Shown here: positions 26,277 to 53,940 of the stretch, one piece after another | Layout: every line of letters starts with the position of its first letter | Position numbering within the stretch: position 1 is the stretch's first letter | Assembly: GCF_003704095.1 (NCBI RefSeq) | Contig: NW_020844755.1 | Location: 186,001-250,000 of the forward strand | Length of the DNA stretch: 64,000 nucleotides | Source of the DNA: Pocillopora damicornis | Lineage: Eukaryota | Direction: 5' to 3' | The notes under the pieces: model-generated | Told to the model about the DNA's origin: nothing | The model's input: only the letters and a program-made list of their open reading frames with translations | Database searches by the model: none | Program-made: the position numbers and the translations under genes

Positions 26277-28936
26277 ATGGAGACCACATTTACTTGGAAA
26301 TTGATATTCTGTCTTTGCTTGGTCCGTGAAGGTGAATATTTCTATGTCTACACTCTAAGAGATAATCAGACAGCACGTTGAGTAATTTCCTTGTACCTCC
26401 ATTTAGCCAGCAGAGCCAGATTTCATTTTAAACTAATCTATCGCACGGTGGCAATAATGACCCAACTTTTTTCTCACTTAAATTTTAATCGTGTAATATT
26501 TCGATGGTTATTCTGCATTGCGTCCTTATGTTCGCATGACANNNNNNNNNNNNNNNNNNNNNNNNNNNNNNNNNNNNNNNNNNNNNNNNNNNNNNNNNNN
26601 NNNNNNNNNNNNNNNNNNNNNNNNNNNNNNNNNNNNNNNNNAACAGAAGAACCAAACAAAGATTTTTAAAAAGGCTAGGCGCCGTAATTTACGTCTCGTG
26701 TTTCTCCCTACACTTCTTCCGTGCTCTAGCCGCTTCCTGCGTGCTTCACAACAGAACGAAGCACGGTCAAGGCTTCTCTATTTGTTAAATTTTATTGTCA
26801 TTTTTGTTTACAGTTACAGCTGGGGCTATTTCCTATAAGGTGAGTAAGAAAAAAAAATTAAGCTTTCATACTAATTTAATTTCAATCAAAATTCATAAAT
26901 GAAACGAGAGACGCTCTTTTTTTATCGGCAGAAACCCCTCAAAAGCAGCACAGTTCAAACAAAATTTAAAATCTATTAAATATTTTTCATCTTATTTGAT
27001 TTTAAAGGAATCAAAGGAAGGATTCCCAGAGAATCTTCATCATAAAATGACTAAGAGAGAACTGGAGATCTTTTTTGGAACTGATGACCTATCACAAGGT
27101 AGTCCCATAAATTTCAAATAAAACTACTTCTAAATAAACGCAAAAAGATTTACTTTTGATAAAATGGTATCAAAATCCATGGTTTGTTAAATGATAAAAT
27201 GAAAAAATCTGCTATTGATCTAATTAAATTGTTTCTTAACCAGTTGATGAGATGTTAAGGGAACTTTTTAGTTGAAATGGATTTTGCAAACGGATTTGCT
27301 CTTTCTTTTATCAAATTACGTCAGATTACGTCAGATTACGTACTCGAACACGTCACTTGAGATTCGAATATCACTCCTCGCGCGCCTCACTCGACAATTT
27401 GTATGGAATCGAGTCGACAAGATTACGCAAAAATGTTCAACTATCTATCTTACTCTAGAATAGATCTTTTTACAGTATGGGTATTTTTTCATTTCTCACG
27501 TTATCGGATGAACATTTCTTGTCTATCTGAATTACCTGAAGACTAAATATTTCATAAACTATGAAAAATTTTCAGTACCTGAGTACGACATTAGCGAACC
27601 GTTTGAAGAGAAAACCGATGATCACCGTCAAAAGAGAAGTGCTGAAGATGATAAAAAGTACTTCAAGATAAAGGCTTTTGGCGAAGAACTGCCTTTACAA
27701 CTCATATTAAATCAGAAGCTTATGTCACCCGATTTTAAAGTGGAAATCAAACGAAGAGATGGGAGAACAGAGTATCAACCGGCTCCGAAAAATACTTTTT
27801 ATCTTGGAAAGGTCATGTCAGAGTCCGAGTCAATGGTGGCCGTTAGTCACTCCCAGGGAATGGTGAGAGTCATAATTTTTTTTCATACTATTCTTCTTAA
27901 TAAATTTGGCACGGTAAAATTACGAATGACATAGTATTACAAAATTGTTTAAAAATTTTTCCCTATATTCATCAGCCGACCAAATCGCCATGAATTGAGC
28001 TTATTCGAAGCTAAATCCTAGAAATTCTCAAAGCAACCGTTACCTACCCCTAAATTTCTATTTTAAAGTAATACCAAATATTACAGGTGTACTCATGTGA
28101 CGAACCAAGGCTAACGGTTTTGAAAGCTTGAGTTGAGGATACTCATGATGCTGGTCTGTATATAGGCTACTGATTCTTCAGGTTAATCACTGACAGCTGC
28201 TGTATCCACTGATATTCCTAGGTGTGAGGTGCTGTCAGAGTGACGTTAAAGATCACTCAAAACGTTCACTTAGCAAGATTTAGCAACTAGCATGTCCAGT
28301 CCACTGCGCCAGTCAGTCGTTGGCCCTGTTTACTATTGTTCAGAGTCTACAAAATGCTAACTGATCATAACTGTTTTATGTCAATTTTTCTAGCATGGAC
28401 TGATCCAGCGATCCGGTGAATCTTTATACATTCAACCGCTGCCAACTCATCTCTCGAAGCACGTCGAGTATAAAGAGATAAGTCAACCTCACCTCATTGT
28501 CAAAAGCTCAATCAGAGAAAATTTAGTTTTCAGCAAGCGAGGTATATTTTGTTTTCCTCATCTAATTGACATAATGTTTAAGAAGCTATGTTACGGTATC
28601 CTAAGTTTTCAAAGTTGTCATTCGCAGTCTGCGTTAAACGTTATCACAACCATCTACAACTATTTCATTTAGAGTTTGCTCTATTTCTTATATTTTGGAT
28701 GTGGTCTCTACAAACACAAAAAGTTCATTTTAGAGAGTTATCCGCATCACAACAACTTTTATACTTATGTTACCTATTTTGTTCCAACAGCTAAGGCAAC
28801 TTCATCGAAAAGAATTTTGCGCTCCATTAAATCGTCAAACAAATACTTGGAAGCTGCTTTGGTTACAGATGAAATCACTGCTGAGAAATATGGCGAGTCC
28901 AAAATTGCATCAATTCTGCTCATCATTGGGAACATT
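26277..28936 (+). CDS. Gene B signal peptide, prodomain and start of the catalytic domain (exons 1-6)
   Basis: [18 protein letters not shown]; [53 protein letters not shown]; KRILR|[16 protein letters not shown]. Confidence 0.88.
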
Positions 28937-52900: not shown

Positions 52901-53940
52901 TTTCTCTCTCCAAAATCCTTTTTTTTTTTTTACGTAGAGACAACCTTTCGCCATATCTTTCTCCCTGGCGAGGGAGAAATGTTGGCCCCGTGGCGATCCC
53001 AGAAATCTTTGCGCAAACACAAGGATTCGATCATTGGCAACTCAGTCATCCGGTAAAGATTGCCTTCCATTAAGAATCTGGGGGTAACGTCAACGCTTTT
53101 TCCCTCTTGCTACGTTCTTATCGGCCTTGAAGCTTGCTCGACATCGTCAGAATGATTTAGTTATCATCCTATTCGTTACACATACACGTGCCTTTTTTTT
53201 TTTCTCTTAGAACTGCTCCCAAAACAGATTCCTCTGGGATGCTTTAAAGAGAAAAGATCCTCCTCCTCCCGACTGCTCAGAGTAAAGTTTGGGAGTTTCT
53301 CGAGCTCATACGATGAAGAGGATCCTTACGCAATGGTCATCAGATGCACGCACCTCGCCCGAGACATGGACTATGAATACTTTGCGGTTCAGAACTTTGG
53401 TGACTGTCGCACAGATTCGAAAATAGTCGACAACTATAACACGTATGGAGTTGCAACTCCAGACAAGTGCCTGGGAGGAGTTGGTGCATTGCTGACCAAT
53501 TATGTATATCGGCTAAGACCAGCGTTCATAGGTTCAAATGTGTGCGATACTGTACCGTGCAAGAATGGTGGGACATGCGTTGTGCATTTCAATGATCCGG
53601 ATAAATATCACTGTGAGTGCGGAAGTCTCTTTGCAGGGGACAATTGTGAAAGTAAGTGTTATTTTGAAACGCACGTAAATTAATCTTCTTTATCATATTA
53701 ATAATACTGGAAACGTCTACAAAGTATATTTTGTTTGTACTGACGACTGGCGAGCTGACACATTGACTCTTGTTGACAGACAGAGTGACTGGGACAATTA
53801 AGTGAAAATAATAAGAAACTAGCATTACTGGTATCGTTGCATTTGCTTGAACTAGTAGTTAGTAGCTAAAAAACTTCCTGCATTCTACTAAACTTAACTT
53901 GACTATTTTTCCTTCCTTGCTAGGTGCATTAATAAAGTAA
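26277..53940 (+). CDS. Gene B: giant ADAMTS-like metalloprotease with a tandem EGF/WSC-like tail; interrupted by assembly gaps
   Basis: Core exons: 26277-26331, 26814-26839, 27008-27098, 27576-27862, 28394-28541, 28791-28936, 29087-29173, 29374-29480, 29999-30015, 30237-30345, 30686-30820, 31550-31715, 31942-32034, 32120-32259, 32833-32899, 33439-33523 (GC donor), 33730-33851, 33971-34088, 34372-34464, 34607-34767, 35517-35658, 36034-36160, 36540-36756, 37088-37265. These total 2917 nt, open frame, ending in phase 1. Phase 1-1 EGF/WSC exons continue to 53651, and the last exon is 53924-53940 (SALIK*). Canonical HETGHNFGLGHD and IMA Met-turn. Confidence 0.9.
29087..32034 (+). CDS. Gene B M12B metalloprotease and disintegrin-like exons (7-13)
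   Basis: [17 protein letters not shown]|[42 protein letters not shown]. Confidence 0.92.
31331..31369 (+). repeat. (ATTATCGT)x5 tandem repeat
   Basis: Direct inspection. Confidence 0.9.
32120..37265 (+). CDS. Gene B TSP1, Cys-rich, spacer and three further TSP1 exons (14-24)
   Basis: [32 protein letters not shown]|PKYGGKNC; [13 protein letters not shown]; IRGPTTETL; [11 protein letters not shown]; [11 protein letters not shown]; CSTTCKPG. Confidence 0.92.
33060..33270. mobile_element. Non-autonomous piggyBac-type MITE in a gene B intron
   Basis: TTAA-CCCTTAAACTCC...GGAGTGAAAGGG-TTAA: terminal inverted repeats with CCC/GGG ends and a TTAA target site. Confidence 0.7.
34930..35265 (+). repeat. 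Degenerate (GTCA)n simple-repeat tract
   Basis: Many cagt/gtca/gcca tetramers in intron 20 of gene B. Confidence 0.8.
37989..39307 (+). CDS. Gene B: four single-EGF exons (37989-38102; 38419-38508, truncated 4-Cys; 38744-38866; 39185-39307)
   Basis: C-x4/5-C-x5-C-xn-C-x-C-x8-C spacing. All are phase 1-1 with AG/GT ends. Confidence 0.88.
39420..39540 (+). mobile_element. Decayed tRNA-derived SINE-like fragment (related fragments at about 37355-37445 + and 49965-50080 -)
   Basis: A B-box-like GGTTCGAACC is followed by gtgttgcgtccatgggcactctctcagtgtctctttcc, a body similar to the other fragments. Family recalled, not searched. Confidence 0.45.
39880..42769 (+). CDS. Gene B cassette 1: EGF 39880-40002, EGF 40776-40901, EGF 41234-41356, WSC-like a 41617-41898, WSC-like b+EGF 42335-42769
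   Basis: Exon sizes 123/126/123/282/435 nt, all phase 1-1, with open frames. Confidence 0.9.
43146..45557 (+). CDS. Gene B cassette 2: EGF 43146-43268, EGF 43624-43749 (GC donor), EGF 44047-44169, WSC-like a 44643-44930, WSC-like b from 45463 (cut by the gap)
   Basis: Paralogous to cassette 1 exon by exon. The last exon runs into Ns at 45558. Confidence 0.88.
46899..49688 (+). CDS. Gene B cassette 3 (partial, gap-fragmented): EGF 46899-47021 and WSC-like b+EGF 49254-49688
   Basis: [25 protein letters not shown] (123 nt) and [23 protein letters not shown] (435 nt). The other exons are presumably in the gaps or on the inverted contig. Confidence 0.75.
47117..47470. repeat. Two tandem decayed copies (period about 197 nt) of a palindromic MITE-like element
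   Basis: ggccccgttagctccaagcgtgaataacgct..tagataaatctc at 47117 and ggctccgttagctcgaagggtggataacgct..tagataaatctc at about 47314. Both end in ttgaacaact..tataatagatttcaa. Confidence 0.65.
47981..48724 (-). CDS. Two gene-B-type EGF exons in inverted orientation on a gap-flanked contig (48635-48724, 90 nt, 4-Cys; 47981-48106, 126 nt)
   Basis: The reverse complement gives [29 protein letters not shown] and [41 protein letters not shown] with intact AG/GT ends. Probably a mis-oriented or haplotype contig. Confidence 0.7.
49041..49185 (+). pseudogene. Decayed pseudo-exon copy of the WSC-like b exon 5' end
   Basis: cag|aaaccactcccaaaacgaatatctcttggacgtttcaaggattag..cctcgactgctcaaaatt..atcatcagaggcgtccatctt resembles [23 protein letters not shown] but has a stop, indels and loss of cysteines. 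Confidence 0.6.
50489..53940 (+). CDS. Gene B cassette 4 and terminal exon: EGF 50489-50611, EGF 50728-50853, EGF 52190-52312, WSC-like a 52389-52676, WSC-like b+EGF 53211-53651, last exon 53924-53940
   Basis: Sizes 123/126/123/288/441 nt, phase 1-1. The terminal exon follows a polypyrimidine tract ending in tag and reads GT GCA TTA ATA AAG TAA. Confidence 0.87.

What the first reader, a model, noticed from the sequence alone, without database searches (positions are those of the whole stretch)
26277..53940. ADAMTS protease fused to a long array of EGF and WSC-like lectin modules
Seen: a complete ADAMTS core with an intact HETGHNFGLGHD motif is followed by 4 EGF exons and at least four cassettes of about 365 aa (EGF-EGF-EGF-WSCa-WSCb-EGF). 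17 EGF-type and 7 WSC-like modules are visible on the + strand. The protein ends SALIK* with no transmembrane helix. Established: vertebrate and nematode ADAMTS tails use TSP1, PLAC, GON-1, CUB or mucin modules, and I know of none with EGF/WSC arrays. Inference: a secreted, multivalent glycan-targeted protease, possibly acting on mucus, mesoglea, skeletal organic matrix or microbial/symbiont surfaces.
Basis: partly seen in the sequence, partly recalled or inferred. Interest (0 to 1): 0.9.

Follow-up and report, generated by a model that had tools for sequence, protein, structure and literature searches.

The report
Coral ADAMTS protease with EGF/WSC tail
This Pocillopora coral gene really encodes one secreted ADAMTS-type zinc protease with a long tail of EGF and WSC-type modules; relatives already sit in other coral genomes under wrong names such as "Notch-like", but no paper found here describes the family.

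Summary
On the + strand, 26277-53940 holds a signal peptide, M12B propeptide, catalytic domain with HETGH-N-FGLGHD split by an intron, disintegrin-like, Cys-rich and spacer regions, and 1+3 TSP1 repeats. These are followed by 17 EGF-type and 7 WSC-like modules and the ending S-ALIK-stop.

RNA contigs from three independent studies splice the last TSP1 exon (ends 37265) to the first EGF exon (starts 37989) and run on into the first WSC exon. It is therefore one gene.

The WSC-like module is a four-cysteine variant of the WSC fold (VIA-align Z 9.4-11.2 to Kremen1, glyoxal oxidase and Wsc1).

The architecture is not unique:
- Exons are 100% identical to Pocillopora damicornis RMX48625.1, a truncated model that lacks the protease.
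- Full-length orthologues exist in Orbicella (2540/2905 aa, named "notch homolog 1-like") and Oculina (2588 aa, "uncharacterized").
- A second ADAMTS-EGF-WSC gene lies just upstream.
- Nematostella and a jellyfish have ADAMTS proteins with one WSC pair.

No paper describing this architecture was found.

The stretch 45.5-48.9 kb is badly assembled, so the cassette number (at least 4) is uncertain. Glycan targeting remains an inference.

The parts
26277..26331 (+). Exon 1: start codon and signal peptide ([18 protein letters not shown]), phase-1 donor
   Evidence: Read. It resembles the N-termini of the Oculina and Orbicella orthologues. No signal-peptide predictor was run.
27035..28504 (+). Propeptide exons (27035-27097, 27548-27874, 28394-28504)
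   Evidence: Pfam PF01562, E 5.5e-11. Collinear with Oculina P0166 residues 32-191.
28793..30820 (+). Catalytic domain exons (about 28793-28935, 29095-29179, 29371-29481, 30200-30345, 30686-30820). They carry an RILR|S furin-type site, HETGH-N-FGLGHD and a YIM Met-turn.
   Evidence: Collinear with the Reprolysin region of P0166, residues 200-398. Zinc-site splice read. Single-exon Pfam is weak: Reprolysin_3, E 0.024.
31554..32031 (+). Disintegrin-like region (31554-31709, 31951-32031)
   Evidence: tblastn against P0166 residues 401-483, and against P0026/P0049, where Pfam finds ADAMTS_CR_2.
32117..32896 (+). Central TSP1 repeat (32117-32257, 32834-32896)
   Evidence: Pfam TSP_1, E 2.3e-6. 74% identical to P0166 residues 483-529.
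33442..35606 (+). Cys-rich and spacer exons (33442-33513, 33726-33854, 33974-34081, 34365-34466, 34606-34767, 35517-35606)
   Evidence: ADAMTS_CR_3 scores 19 bits. ADAMTS_spacer1 scores 26.2 bits (cut-off 23.6) on P0206, which matched all 13 EGF/WSC exons compared at 100%. The 34767>35517 joint is seen as a loose end in three RNA runs.
35607..37265 (+). Three C-terminal TSP1 repeats (exons 35517-35658, 36034-36160, 36540-36756, 37088-37265)
   Evidence: Pfam TSP1_ADAMTS, E 4e-14 and 1.5e-5. RNA joints 35658>36034, 36160>36540 and 36756>37088. Open frame across the joined exons.
37989..39307 (+). Four linker EGF exons: E1 37989-38102, E2 38419-38508 (four Cys), E3 38744-38866, E4 39185-39307
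   Evidence: RNA joint 37265>37989 in runs X2, X3 and X5, plus the later joints. Pfam EGF. Frames and phases.
39880..42769 (+). Cassette 1: EGF 39880-40002, EGF 40776-40901, EGF 41234-41356, WSCa 41617-41898, WSCb+EGF 42335-42769
   Evidence: RNA joints up to 41356, then a loose end that reads into 41617. Modules. WSC fold.
43146..45557 (+). Cassette 2: EGF 43146-43268, EGF 43624-43749 (GC donor), EGF 44047-44169, WSCa 44643-44930, and WSCb 45463-45557 cut by the gap
46899..47021 (+). Type-A EGF exon of a third cassette
47784..48807 (-). Piece between two gaps that carries a type-A EGF exon (48725-48636, lacking 33 nt) and a type-B EGF exon (48110-47952) in the opposite orientation. It is probably a misoriented contig or a recent inverted duplicate.
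   Evidence: tblastn with P0165/P0166, translation, and blastn at 88-91% to 46815-47683.
49254..49688 (+). WSCb+EGF exon of the third (or a later) cassette
50489..53651 (+). Last cassette: EGF 50489-50611, EGF 50728-50853, EGF 52190-52312, WSCa 52389-52676, WSCb+EGF 53211-53651
53924..53940 (+). Terminal micro-exon, giving (S)ALIK and the stop codon
   Evidence: Read. Same C-terminus as P0206 (CESALIK); compare Oculina CQSAVKK.

Best explanation
**What it is.** The locus is one gene of a Pocillopora coral. It encodes a secreted ADAMTS-family zinc metalloprotease of roughly 2,600 residues.

**Order of parts.** Signal peptide, propeptide, catalytic domain, disintegrin-like region, TSP1, Cys-rich region, spacer and three more TSP1 repeats. 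After these, where other ADAMTS proteins carry PLAC, GON-1, CUB or mucin modules, it carries four EGF modules and at least four cassettes of EGF-EGF-EGF-WSCa-WSCb-EGF. It ends five residues after the last EGF.

**Shown here**
- The single spliced transcript from the spacer through the first WSC exon.
- The intact zinc-binding and Met-turn motifs.
- The WSC fold of the repeated module.
- Conservation of the whole architecture in other stony corals.

**Inferred**
- The propeptide is removed at the RILR|S furin-type site.
- The enzyme is active.
- The TSP1/Cys-rich/spacer region provides the usual ADAMTS exosites.
- The EGF/WSC array adds multivalent binding to a repeated ligand in the extracellular matrix, mucus or skeletal matrix. 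The ligand is most likely a glycan or proteoglycan, but this is unproven.

**Likely origin.** The array arose from an older cnidarian ADAMTS with one WSCa-WSCb pair. EGF exons were inserted and a five-exon block of phase 1-1 exons was duplicated in tandem. That exon structure also allows in-frame cassette skipping: Orbicella isoforms differ by exactly one cassette.
For: **One transcript**
- GT..AG joints 37265>37989 and ten others appear in Logan RNA contigs of three studies.
- One 1,512-nt contig spans 36032-41356.
- The joined RNA-supported exons give a single open frame.

**ADAMTS core**
- Pfam hits on single exons.
- Collinear tblastn with Oculina XP_078379209.1 residues 32-1004.
- The zinc motif.

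**WSC fold**
- AlphaFold model at pLDDT 92.
- VIA-align Z 11.2, 10.8, 10.5 and 9.4 to two Kremen1 entries (5fws, 9vfr), a glyoxal oxidase WSC domain and Wsc1. The next hit, a PAN domain, scores 5.3.
- The top 7 Foldseek hits are all WSC proteins.
- hhalign against canonical WSC repeats gives 88.6% probability, E 2.6e-6.

**Conservation**
- Orbicella LOC110040616, 2540 and 2905 aa, with the zinc motif plus 8 or 10 WSC-like domains. The same 2905-aa ORF sits on a 9,004-nt JGI contig.
- Oculina, 2588 aa with 4 cassettes.
- A second such gene lies 0.3 kb to 25 kb upstream of the window. It is orthologous to Stylophora PFX24446.1.

**Ancestral form.** Nematostella XP_048588217.1, an Orbicella ADAMTS18-like protein and a Sanderia protein each carry one WSCa-WSCb pair.
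Against: - No RNA was laid on the protease exons or downstream of 41.4 kb. The link from the protease to the spacer rests on collinearity with orthologues and their transcripts.
- The deposited P. damicornis model (RMX48625.1) omits the protease.
- The catalytic domain lacks several cysteines usual in ADAMTS. It has three in the exons read, so activity is not certain.
- Single WSC-like modules fall below Pfam's threshold and have 4 rather than 8 cysteines.
- WSC domains have no universal ligand: Kremen's binds protein, and the Wsc1 structure shows no glycan pocket.
- The stretch 45.5-48.9 kb is misassembled.
Confidence: 0.78

Rival explanations
1. These are two adjacent genes: an ordinary ADAMTS ending near 37.3 kb, and a separate secreted EGF/WSC protein.
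For: The deposited gene model for this locus (P0206, RMX48625.1) has no protease domain. About 720 bp separate the last TSP1 exon from the first EGF exon.
Against: Spliced RNA contigs of three studies join 37265 to 37989 in frame. P0206 itself already joins the TSP1 repeats to the EGF/WSC array. Orthologues in Orbicella and Oculina carry protease and array in one product, and one of them sits on a 9-kb intronless contig.
Confidence: 0.03
2. The protein is a non-catalytic, ADAMTS-like scaffold. The protease domain is kept for binding only, and the EGF/WSC array is the working part.
For: No activity data exist.
Against: HExxHxxGxxHD and the Met-turn are intact here. The HExxHxxGxxHD zinc motif is also intact in the Oculina and Orbicella orthologues and in the paralogues. 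A propeptide with a furin-type site is kept.
Confidence: 0.1
3. The WSC-like modules are protein-binding modules, as in Kremen, not lectins. The tail would then dock the protease to a protein partner or matrix fibre rather than to glycans.
For: The best structural match is the Kremen1 WSC domain (Z 11.2), which takes part in protein complexes. The Wsc1 structure shows no glycan pocket. The modules keep only 4 of the 8 WSC cysteines.
Against: Fungal WSC proteins bind beta-glucan, as cited in PMC9024836. Relatives of this module sit beside C-type lectin, tectonin, F5/8-C and SUEL-type lectin domains in other invertebrate proteins.
Confidence: 0.3
4. The long array is partly an assembly artefact: repeated cassettes were collapsed, duplicated or misplaced by the scaffolder.
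For: Four gaps lie inside the array. One exon is cut by a gap. A 1-kb piece lies in reverse orientation and duplicates neighbouring sequence at 88-91% identity.
Against: Cassettes 1 and 4 are complete and differ at 78-86% DNA identity. Orthologues have 4 or 5 cassettes. RNA supports cassette 1. Only the number and order of the middle cassettes are in doubt.
Confidence: 0.1

Closest known systems
Orbicella faveolata LOC110040616 (XP_020601537.1-543.1) and Oculina patagonica LOC144662300 (XP_078379209.1)
   Same: Same architecture from signal peptide to the EGF/WSC cassettes. They are 52-94% identical to the window's exons and carry the same zinc motif type, with 4 or 5 cassettes.
   Different: They come from other coral families. 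[quoted passage not shown] The Orbicella products end after a WSCb, without the final EGF.
Stylophora pistillata PFX24446.1 "Neurogenic locus Notch protein", with its Pocillopora orthologue just upstream of the window, and Orbicella "ADAMTS20-like" XP_020601515.1
   Same: A paralogous ADAMTS with EGF modules and 2-4 WSCa-WSCb pairs, lying in the same gene cluster.
   Different: Only 42-48% identical in the WSC exons, with a different number and order of EGF modules.
Nematostella vectensis ADAMTS18 isoform X2 (XP_048588217.1), an Orbicella ADAMTS18-like protein and Sanderia malayensis P011708
   Same: An ADAMTS core followed by a WSCa-WSCb pair at the C-terminus.
   Different: One pair only, with no EGF modules and no cassettes. 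About 30-45% identical in the WSC modules.
Bilaterian ADAMTS proteases (for example human ADAMTS16/18, C. elegans GON-1)
   Same: Propeptide, reprolysin-type catalytic domain with HExxHxxGxxHD and Met-turn, disintegrin-like region, central TSP1, Cys-rich region, spacer and further TSP1 repeats.
   Different: By established knowledge, their tails use PLAC, GON-1, CUB, protease-lacunin or mucin modules. No EGF or WSC tail turned up in the literature searches.
WSC domains of Kremen1 (5FWS), yeast Wsc1 (7PZ2) and Fusarium glyoxal oxidase (9N3U)
   Same: The same PAN/apple-type fold wrapped by a long loop: Z 9.4-11.2 with 88-97 aligned residues.
   Different: 15-16% identity. Four cysteines instead of eight. 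CGG motif not evident. Below the Pfam threshold as single modules.
Hydra TSR-containing zinc metalloproteases with WSC and MAM domains (PMC4820225)
   Same: A cnidarian secreted metalloprotease that combines TSP1 repeats with a WSC domain.
   Different: The domain order includes MAM. No EGF/WSC cassettes are described, and the paper does not call them ADAMTS.

Membership tests
ADAMTS (M12B adamalysin with thrombospondin repeats) | Secretion signal and M12B propeptide | tested here: met
   Hydrophobic N-terminus in exon 1, read by eye and similar to the orthologues' N-termini. PF01562, E 5.5e-11.
ADAMTS (M12B adamalysin with thrombospondin repeats) | Reprolysin-type catalytic domain with HExxHxxGxxHD and a Met-turn | tested here: met
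   HETGH-N-FGLGHD across a phase-2 intron, then YIM. Collinear with the PF01421 region of P0166. Single-exon Pfam is only weak.
ADAMTS (M12B adamalysin with thrombospondin repeats) | Disintegrin-like and Cys-rich domains | tested here: inconclusive
   Collinear with orthologue residues 401-483 and 554-669. ADAMTS_CR_3 scores 19 bits against a cut-off of 21. ADAMTS_CR_2 was seen only in the relatives P0026 and P0049.
ADAMTS (M12B adamalysin with thrombospondin repeats) | Central TSP1, spacer, and C-terminal TSP1 repeats | tested here: met
   TSP_1 E 2.3e-6 and TSP1_ADAMTS E 4e-14. ADAMTS_spacer1 scores 26.2 bits against a cut-off of 23.6 on P0206, which is identical to the window's exons.
ADAMTS (M12B adamalysin with thrombospondin repeats) | Proteolytic activity | not testable with these tools
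   Needs recombinant enzyme.
WSC domain (PF01822) | Pfam gathering score | tested here: not met
   Single modules score 20.5 and 16.4 bits against 27.8. The whole Orbicella orthologue reaches 28.4 bits.
WSC domain (PF01822) | WSC-type PAN/apple fold | tested here: met
   Model at pLDDT 92. Z 11.2, 10.8, 10.5 and 9.4 to WSC domains, against 5.3 for the best non-WSC PAN domain. Foldseek's top 7 hits are all WSC proteins.
WSC domain (PF01822) | Profile-level sequence homology to canonical WSC | tested here: met
   hhalign of 40 WSC-like modules against 8 canonical repeats of Mactra KAL4222352.1: 88.6% probability, E 2.6e-6 over 74 columns. The phmmer hits include proteins in which Pfam finds strong WSC.
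WSC domain (PF01822) | Eight conserved cysteines (four disulfides) and the CGG motif (PMC9024836) | tested here: not met
   Only four cysteines per module are invariant. By alignment they correspond to one PAN-core bond and one WSC-specific bond. That correspondence is an inference.
WSC domain (PF01822) | Carbohydrate binding | not testable with these tools
   Needs a glycan array or pull-down.
EGF-like domain (PF00008) | Six-cysteine EGF pattern and a Pfam match | tested here: met
   16 modules have six Cys and one has four. PF00008 E 6.8e-5 on E1, and 162 bits with 8 stretches on P0206.
Notch (the name given to the orthologues in databases) | LNR, NOD/NODP and ankyrin domains, and a transmembrane segment | tested here: not met
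   Pfam on P0165, P0166, P0206 and P0327 lists no Notch, NOD or Ank families. The product ends five residues after the last EGF. The name is a misnomer caused by the EGF repeats.

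The most novel reading that the evidence does not exclude
Stony corals of the robust clade may have evolved a private family of ADAMTS proteases armed with lectin-like arrays. In this reading, valency is tuned by the number of EGF/WSC cassettes, through tandem duplication and in-frame cassette skipping. The family would process a glycan-rich coral matrix such as the skeletal organic matrix, mucus or mesoglea.
Probability: 0.2. Interest if true: 0.7.

Novelty: new variant of a known kind. 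Interest (0 to 1): 0.5.

Why it matters
ADAMTS proteases are defined as much by their ancillary tails as by their catalytic domains, because the tails decide which matrix component is cut. A conserved coral family replaces the usual tail with 17 or more EGF modules and 7-10 WSC-fold modules. That is a new ancillary architecture for this protease family.

The family has gone unnoticed because automatic annotation calls its members Notch-like or uncharacterized, or truncates them, as at this locus.

Practical consequences:
- It gives coral biology a concrete, testable candidate for matrix, mucus or skeletal remodelling.
- It corrects the gene model pdam_00008003.
- It shows that cnidarian ADAMTS proteins with a WSC pair are ancient.

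The function of the tail is still unknown, so the biological weight is moderate for now.

Tried and rejected
- **HMM of the six window WSC-like modules against PDB sequences.** Only chance hits came back (nanobodies, E > 0.5). Sequence alone does not reach solved WSC structures.
- **First structure model, from a 6-sequence alignment.** It was mediocre (pLDDT 70.6) and gave weak Foldseek scores. It was replaced by a 40-sequence alignment.
- **Literature searches.** Searches for the accession numbers and for ADAMTS together with WSC found no description of this architecture. Papers on coral "neurogenic locus notch" genes (Euphyllia, PMC7579821) and on a P. acuta "WSC domain" protein spot (PMC5792016) could not be tied to this gene.
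- **The look-up of encoding contigs for P0206.** It returned nothing, because records of the window's own genome are left out.
- **Notch reading.** Considered and rejected; see the membership test.
- Exons were searched one by one by reference. The only joining was a local frame check of RNA-supported exons.
- **N stretches.** They were not filled. The genome-wide search was used only to count family members and found no further near-identical cassette copies.
- **Not used.** Complex prediction, the protein-atlas search and a third homologous-protein search. No claim in the report needed them.

Full report
**What is there**

The window is an intron-rich animal sequence (GC 33-41%). RNA runs that hold its exons are labelled coral or marine metagenome. 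All 13 EGF/WSC exons compared, E1 through E24, are 100% identical to RMX48625.1, "hypothetical protein pdam_00008003" of Pocillopora damicornis. The window's assembly has 234 Mb in 4,393 contigs. The organism is therefore Pocillopora damicornis or a very close relative.

**ADAMTS core**

Pfam on single exons, given by reference, finds:
- the M12B propeptide, E 5.5e-11;
- TSP1 repeats (TSP1_ADAMTS, E 4e-14);
- a weak ADAMTS Cys-rich match;
- EGF.

A tblastn of the Oculina orthologue (residues 1-1010) lays its residues 32-1004 collinearly on + strand 27035-38101. This covers the propeptide, catalytic domain, disintegrin-like region, central TSP1, Cys-rich region, spacer and three further TSP1 repeats.

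Exon 1 (26277-26331) gives a hydrophobic N-terminus like those of the orthologues.

The zinc site is split by a phase-2 intron and reads HETGH-N-FGLGHD. A YIM Met-turn follows. RILR|S lies where the orthologue has RKAR|S.

The spacer passes Pfam's threshold on P0206, the deposited product of this locus.

**One gene or two**

I laid Logan RNA contigs of four runs on 35400-41399. Three runs from three different studies show the joint 37265>37989 with GT..AG ends and 108-113 nt on the shorter side.

They also show:
- the three joints between the TSP1 exons;
- the six joints between the seven EGF exons.

One 1,512-nt contig runs from 36032 to 41356. It continues with letters that read into the WSCa exon at 41617. 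A loose end links 35517 back to the spacer exon that ends at 34767. The RNA-supported exons joined together give one open frame with no stop.

So the TSP1 repeats of the ADAMTS and the EGF/WSC array are parts of one spliced mRNA.

I had only one read-laying run. The link from the protease exons to the spacer, and the exons beyond 41.4 kb, therefore rest on orthologues, not on reads.

**The array**

All EGF/WSC exons are multiples of three and phase 1-1. The + strand carries 16 six-Cys EGF modules, one four-Cys EGF (E2), three WSCa exons, three complete WSCb+EGF exons and one WSCb cut by a gap.

The layout is four linker EGF exons followed by cassettes of EGF-EGF-EGF-WSCa-WSCb+EGF, each 363-367 residues. 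One exon (43624-43749) uses a GC donor (GCAAGT). The last cassette exon splices from 53651 to 53924, giving S-ALIK and a stop that ends at 53940. No membrane anchor follows.

**Gaps**

- The first gap (26542-26641) is in intron 1. Orthologues are collinear across it.
- The gap at 45558 cuts the WSCb+EGF exon of cassette 2 after 95 nt. The remainder is not found after the gap.
- Between the gaps at 47684-47783 and 48808-48907 lies a 1,024-bp piece. Its type-A and type-B EGF exons are on the minus strand. It is 88-91% identical in reverse complement to 46815-47683, introns included, and its type-A exon lacks 33 nt. This is most simply a misoriented contig from a recently duplicated cassette. A real inverted duplicate is not excluded.
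- The type-C EGF and WSCa exons of the middle cassette are absent from the assembly.
- Since every cassette exon is phase 1-1, the frame downstream is unaffected. The cassette number (at least four) is open.
- I did not try to fill any gap.

**What the WSC-like module is**

- Single modules score below Pfam's WSC threshold.
- A profile of the six copies finds no solved structure by sequence.
- WSCa and WSCb are about 30% identical to each other and share four invariant cysteines.
- A phmmer scan of 1.84 billion representatives with the WSCb+EGF exon found only 235 proteins at E <= 0.001. Among them are tunicate and other invertebrate proteins in which Pfam sees strong WSC repeats.
- A local profile-profile comparison of 40 modules against eight canonical eight-Cys WSC repeats gives 88.6% probability, E 2.6e-6.
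- With a 40-sequence alignment, AlphaFold gives a confident model (pLDDT 92, pTM 0.83).
- VIA-align against 48,161 PDB representatives ranks four WSC structures first. These are Kremen1 (Z 11.2, and 10.8 in a virus complex), Fusarium glyoxal oxidase (Z 10.5) and yeast Wsc1 (Z 9.4). There is then a clear drop to ordinary PAN/apple domains at Z 5.3 and below. Foldseek agrees.

The module is therefore a divergent, four-cysteine member of the WSC fold. It lacks two of the four disulfides and the CGG motif that define canonical WSC domains (PMC9024836).

**Relatives**

The cluster of the best fragment hit contains Oculina patagonica XP_078379209.1 (2588 aa, "uncharacterized protein LOC144662300"). 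It also contains a 2861-aa variant of that protein with a transposon insertion.

A search with the Oculina protein found three further relatives:
- the Pocillopora model;
- Stylophora PFX24446.1, "Neurogenic locus Notch protein".

The Orbicella products have the zinc motif plus 8 or 10 WSC-like domains, so the isoforms differ by exactly one cassette. The 2905-aa ORF also lies on a 9,004-nt JGI contig, the size of an mRNA. None has Notch-specific domains.

ADAMTS proteins with a single C-terminal WSCa-WSCb pair occur in Nematostella (XP_048588217.1, "ADAMTS18"), in Orbicella, and in the scyphozoan Sanderia.

In this genome the family is clustered:
- Gene A lies on the minus strand of the window (about 17946-5778). 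It is an ADAMTS ending in one WSC-like domain.
- At contig positions 160,708-185,715 (the window starts at 186,001) lies a third gene. It is 52-98% identical (mostly 75-97%) to Stylophora PFX24446.1 and has four WSC pairs.

All proteins found with EGF plus WSC tails come from robust-clade stony corals. The word-based search cannot prove absence elsewhere.

**How it probably works**

Shown:
- a secreted product;
- complete catalytic motifs;
- standard ADAMTS exosite domains;
- a tail of repeated EGF and WSC-fold modules;
- expression as spliced RNA in several coral data sets.

Inferred:
- furin-type activation;
- proteolytic activity;
- a tail that binds a repeated extracellular ligand with high avidity.

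Glycans are the most likely ligand. Fungal WSC proteins bind beta-glucans (cited in PMC9024836). Relatives of this module keep company with C-type lectin, tectonin, F5/8-C and SUEL lectin domains. However, Kremen's WSC domain works in protein complexes and Wsc1 shows no glycan pocket. I put the protein-binding alternative at about 0.3.

**Novelty**

No paper in the library describes an ADAMTS with WSC or EGF/WSC tails, and none cites the accessions. The nearest is a Hydra report of TSR-containing zinc metalloproteases with WSC and MAM domains (PMC4820225).

The sequences themselves are public, but they are misnamed or truncated. I class this as a new variant of a known kind: real, conserved, undescribed, and of unknown function.

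Whole-protein domain searches were done on deposited orthologues and on P0206 instead.

Noticed in passing
window 5778-17946, minus strand: Gene A is a paralogous ADAMTS lying head-to-head with the gene under study. It has a propeptide, a catalytic domain and TSP1 repeats, and it ends in a single four-Cys WSC-like domain (6104-5781). It is about 40% identical to the Nematostella and Orbicella WSC-tailed ADAMTS proteins.
   Followed up: partly
L001/L003/L002 = contig C1390:160708-185715, minus strand (0.3-25 kb upstream of the window): A third gene of the family. It is an ADAMTS with EGF modules and four WSCa-WSCb pairs, 52-98% identical (mostly 75-97%) to Stylophora PFX24446.1 "Neurogenic locus Notch protein". 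The three genes form a cluster. Its counterparts in Orbicella and Oculina lie on the same contig as their orthologues of the gene under study.
   Followed up: partly
window 47784-48807: The piece between two gaps is in reverse orientation. It duplicates 46815-47683 at 88-91% identity, introns included, and its type-A EGF exon has a 33-nt deletion that removes two cysteines. It is likely a scaffolding error in a recently duplicated cassette.
   Followed up: yes
window 29481-30200: The usual ADAMTS cysteine-bonded loop upstream of the zinc site is missing, both here and in the Oculina orthologue (FIAGGG... instead). I did not locate or verify the microexon.
   Followed up: no
window 40294-40333: A stretch of about 40 nt in the intron between two EGF exons is matched by parts of several unrelated RNA contigs in all four runs, with loose ends on both sides. 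It is probably a short dispersed repeat.
   Followed up: no
window 37989-53651 (EGF exons): Seven EGF modules match C-x-S-x-[PA]-C and eleven match C-x(4)-[ST]-C. From my own knowledge these are the Notch-type O-glucose and O-fucose consensus sites. This may have added to the "Notch" misnaming, and it suggests the tail is itself glycosylated.
   Followed up: partly
window 43749/43750: The type-B EGF exon of cassette 2 has a GC (GCAAGT) donor instead of GT. The frame and the Cys pattern require this site.
   Followed up: partly
P0001 (Branchiostoma XP_078580859.1, 5602 aa) and P0203 (Styela, 5975 aa): These are giant chordate proteins. P0001 has 38 tandem four-Cys WSC-like modules arranged in pairs, interspersed with kringle-like stretches. 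It ends in repeats that look like F-type (fucose-binding) lectin domains; I judged both kinds of stretch by eye, not with Pfam. The paired four-Cys WSC variant is therefore not restricted to cnidarians.
   Followed up: no
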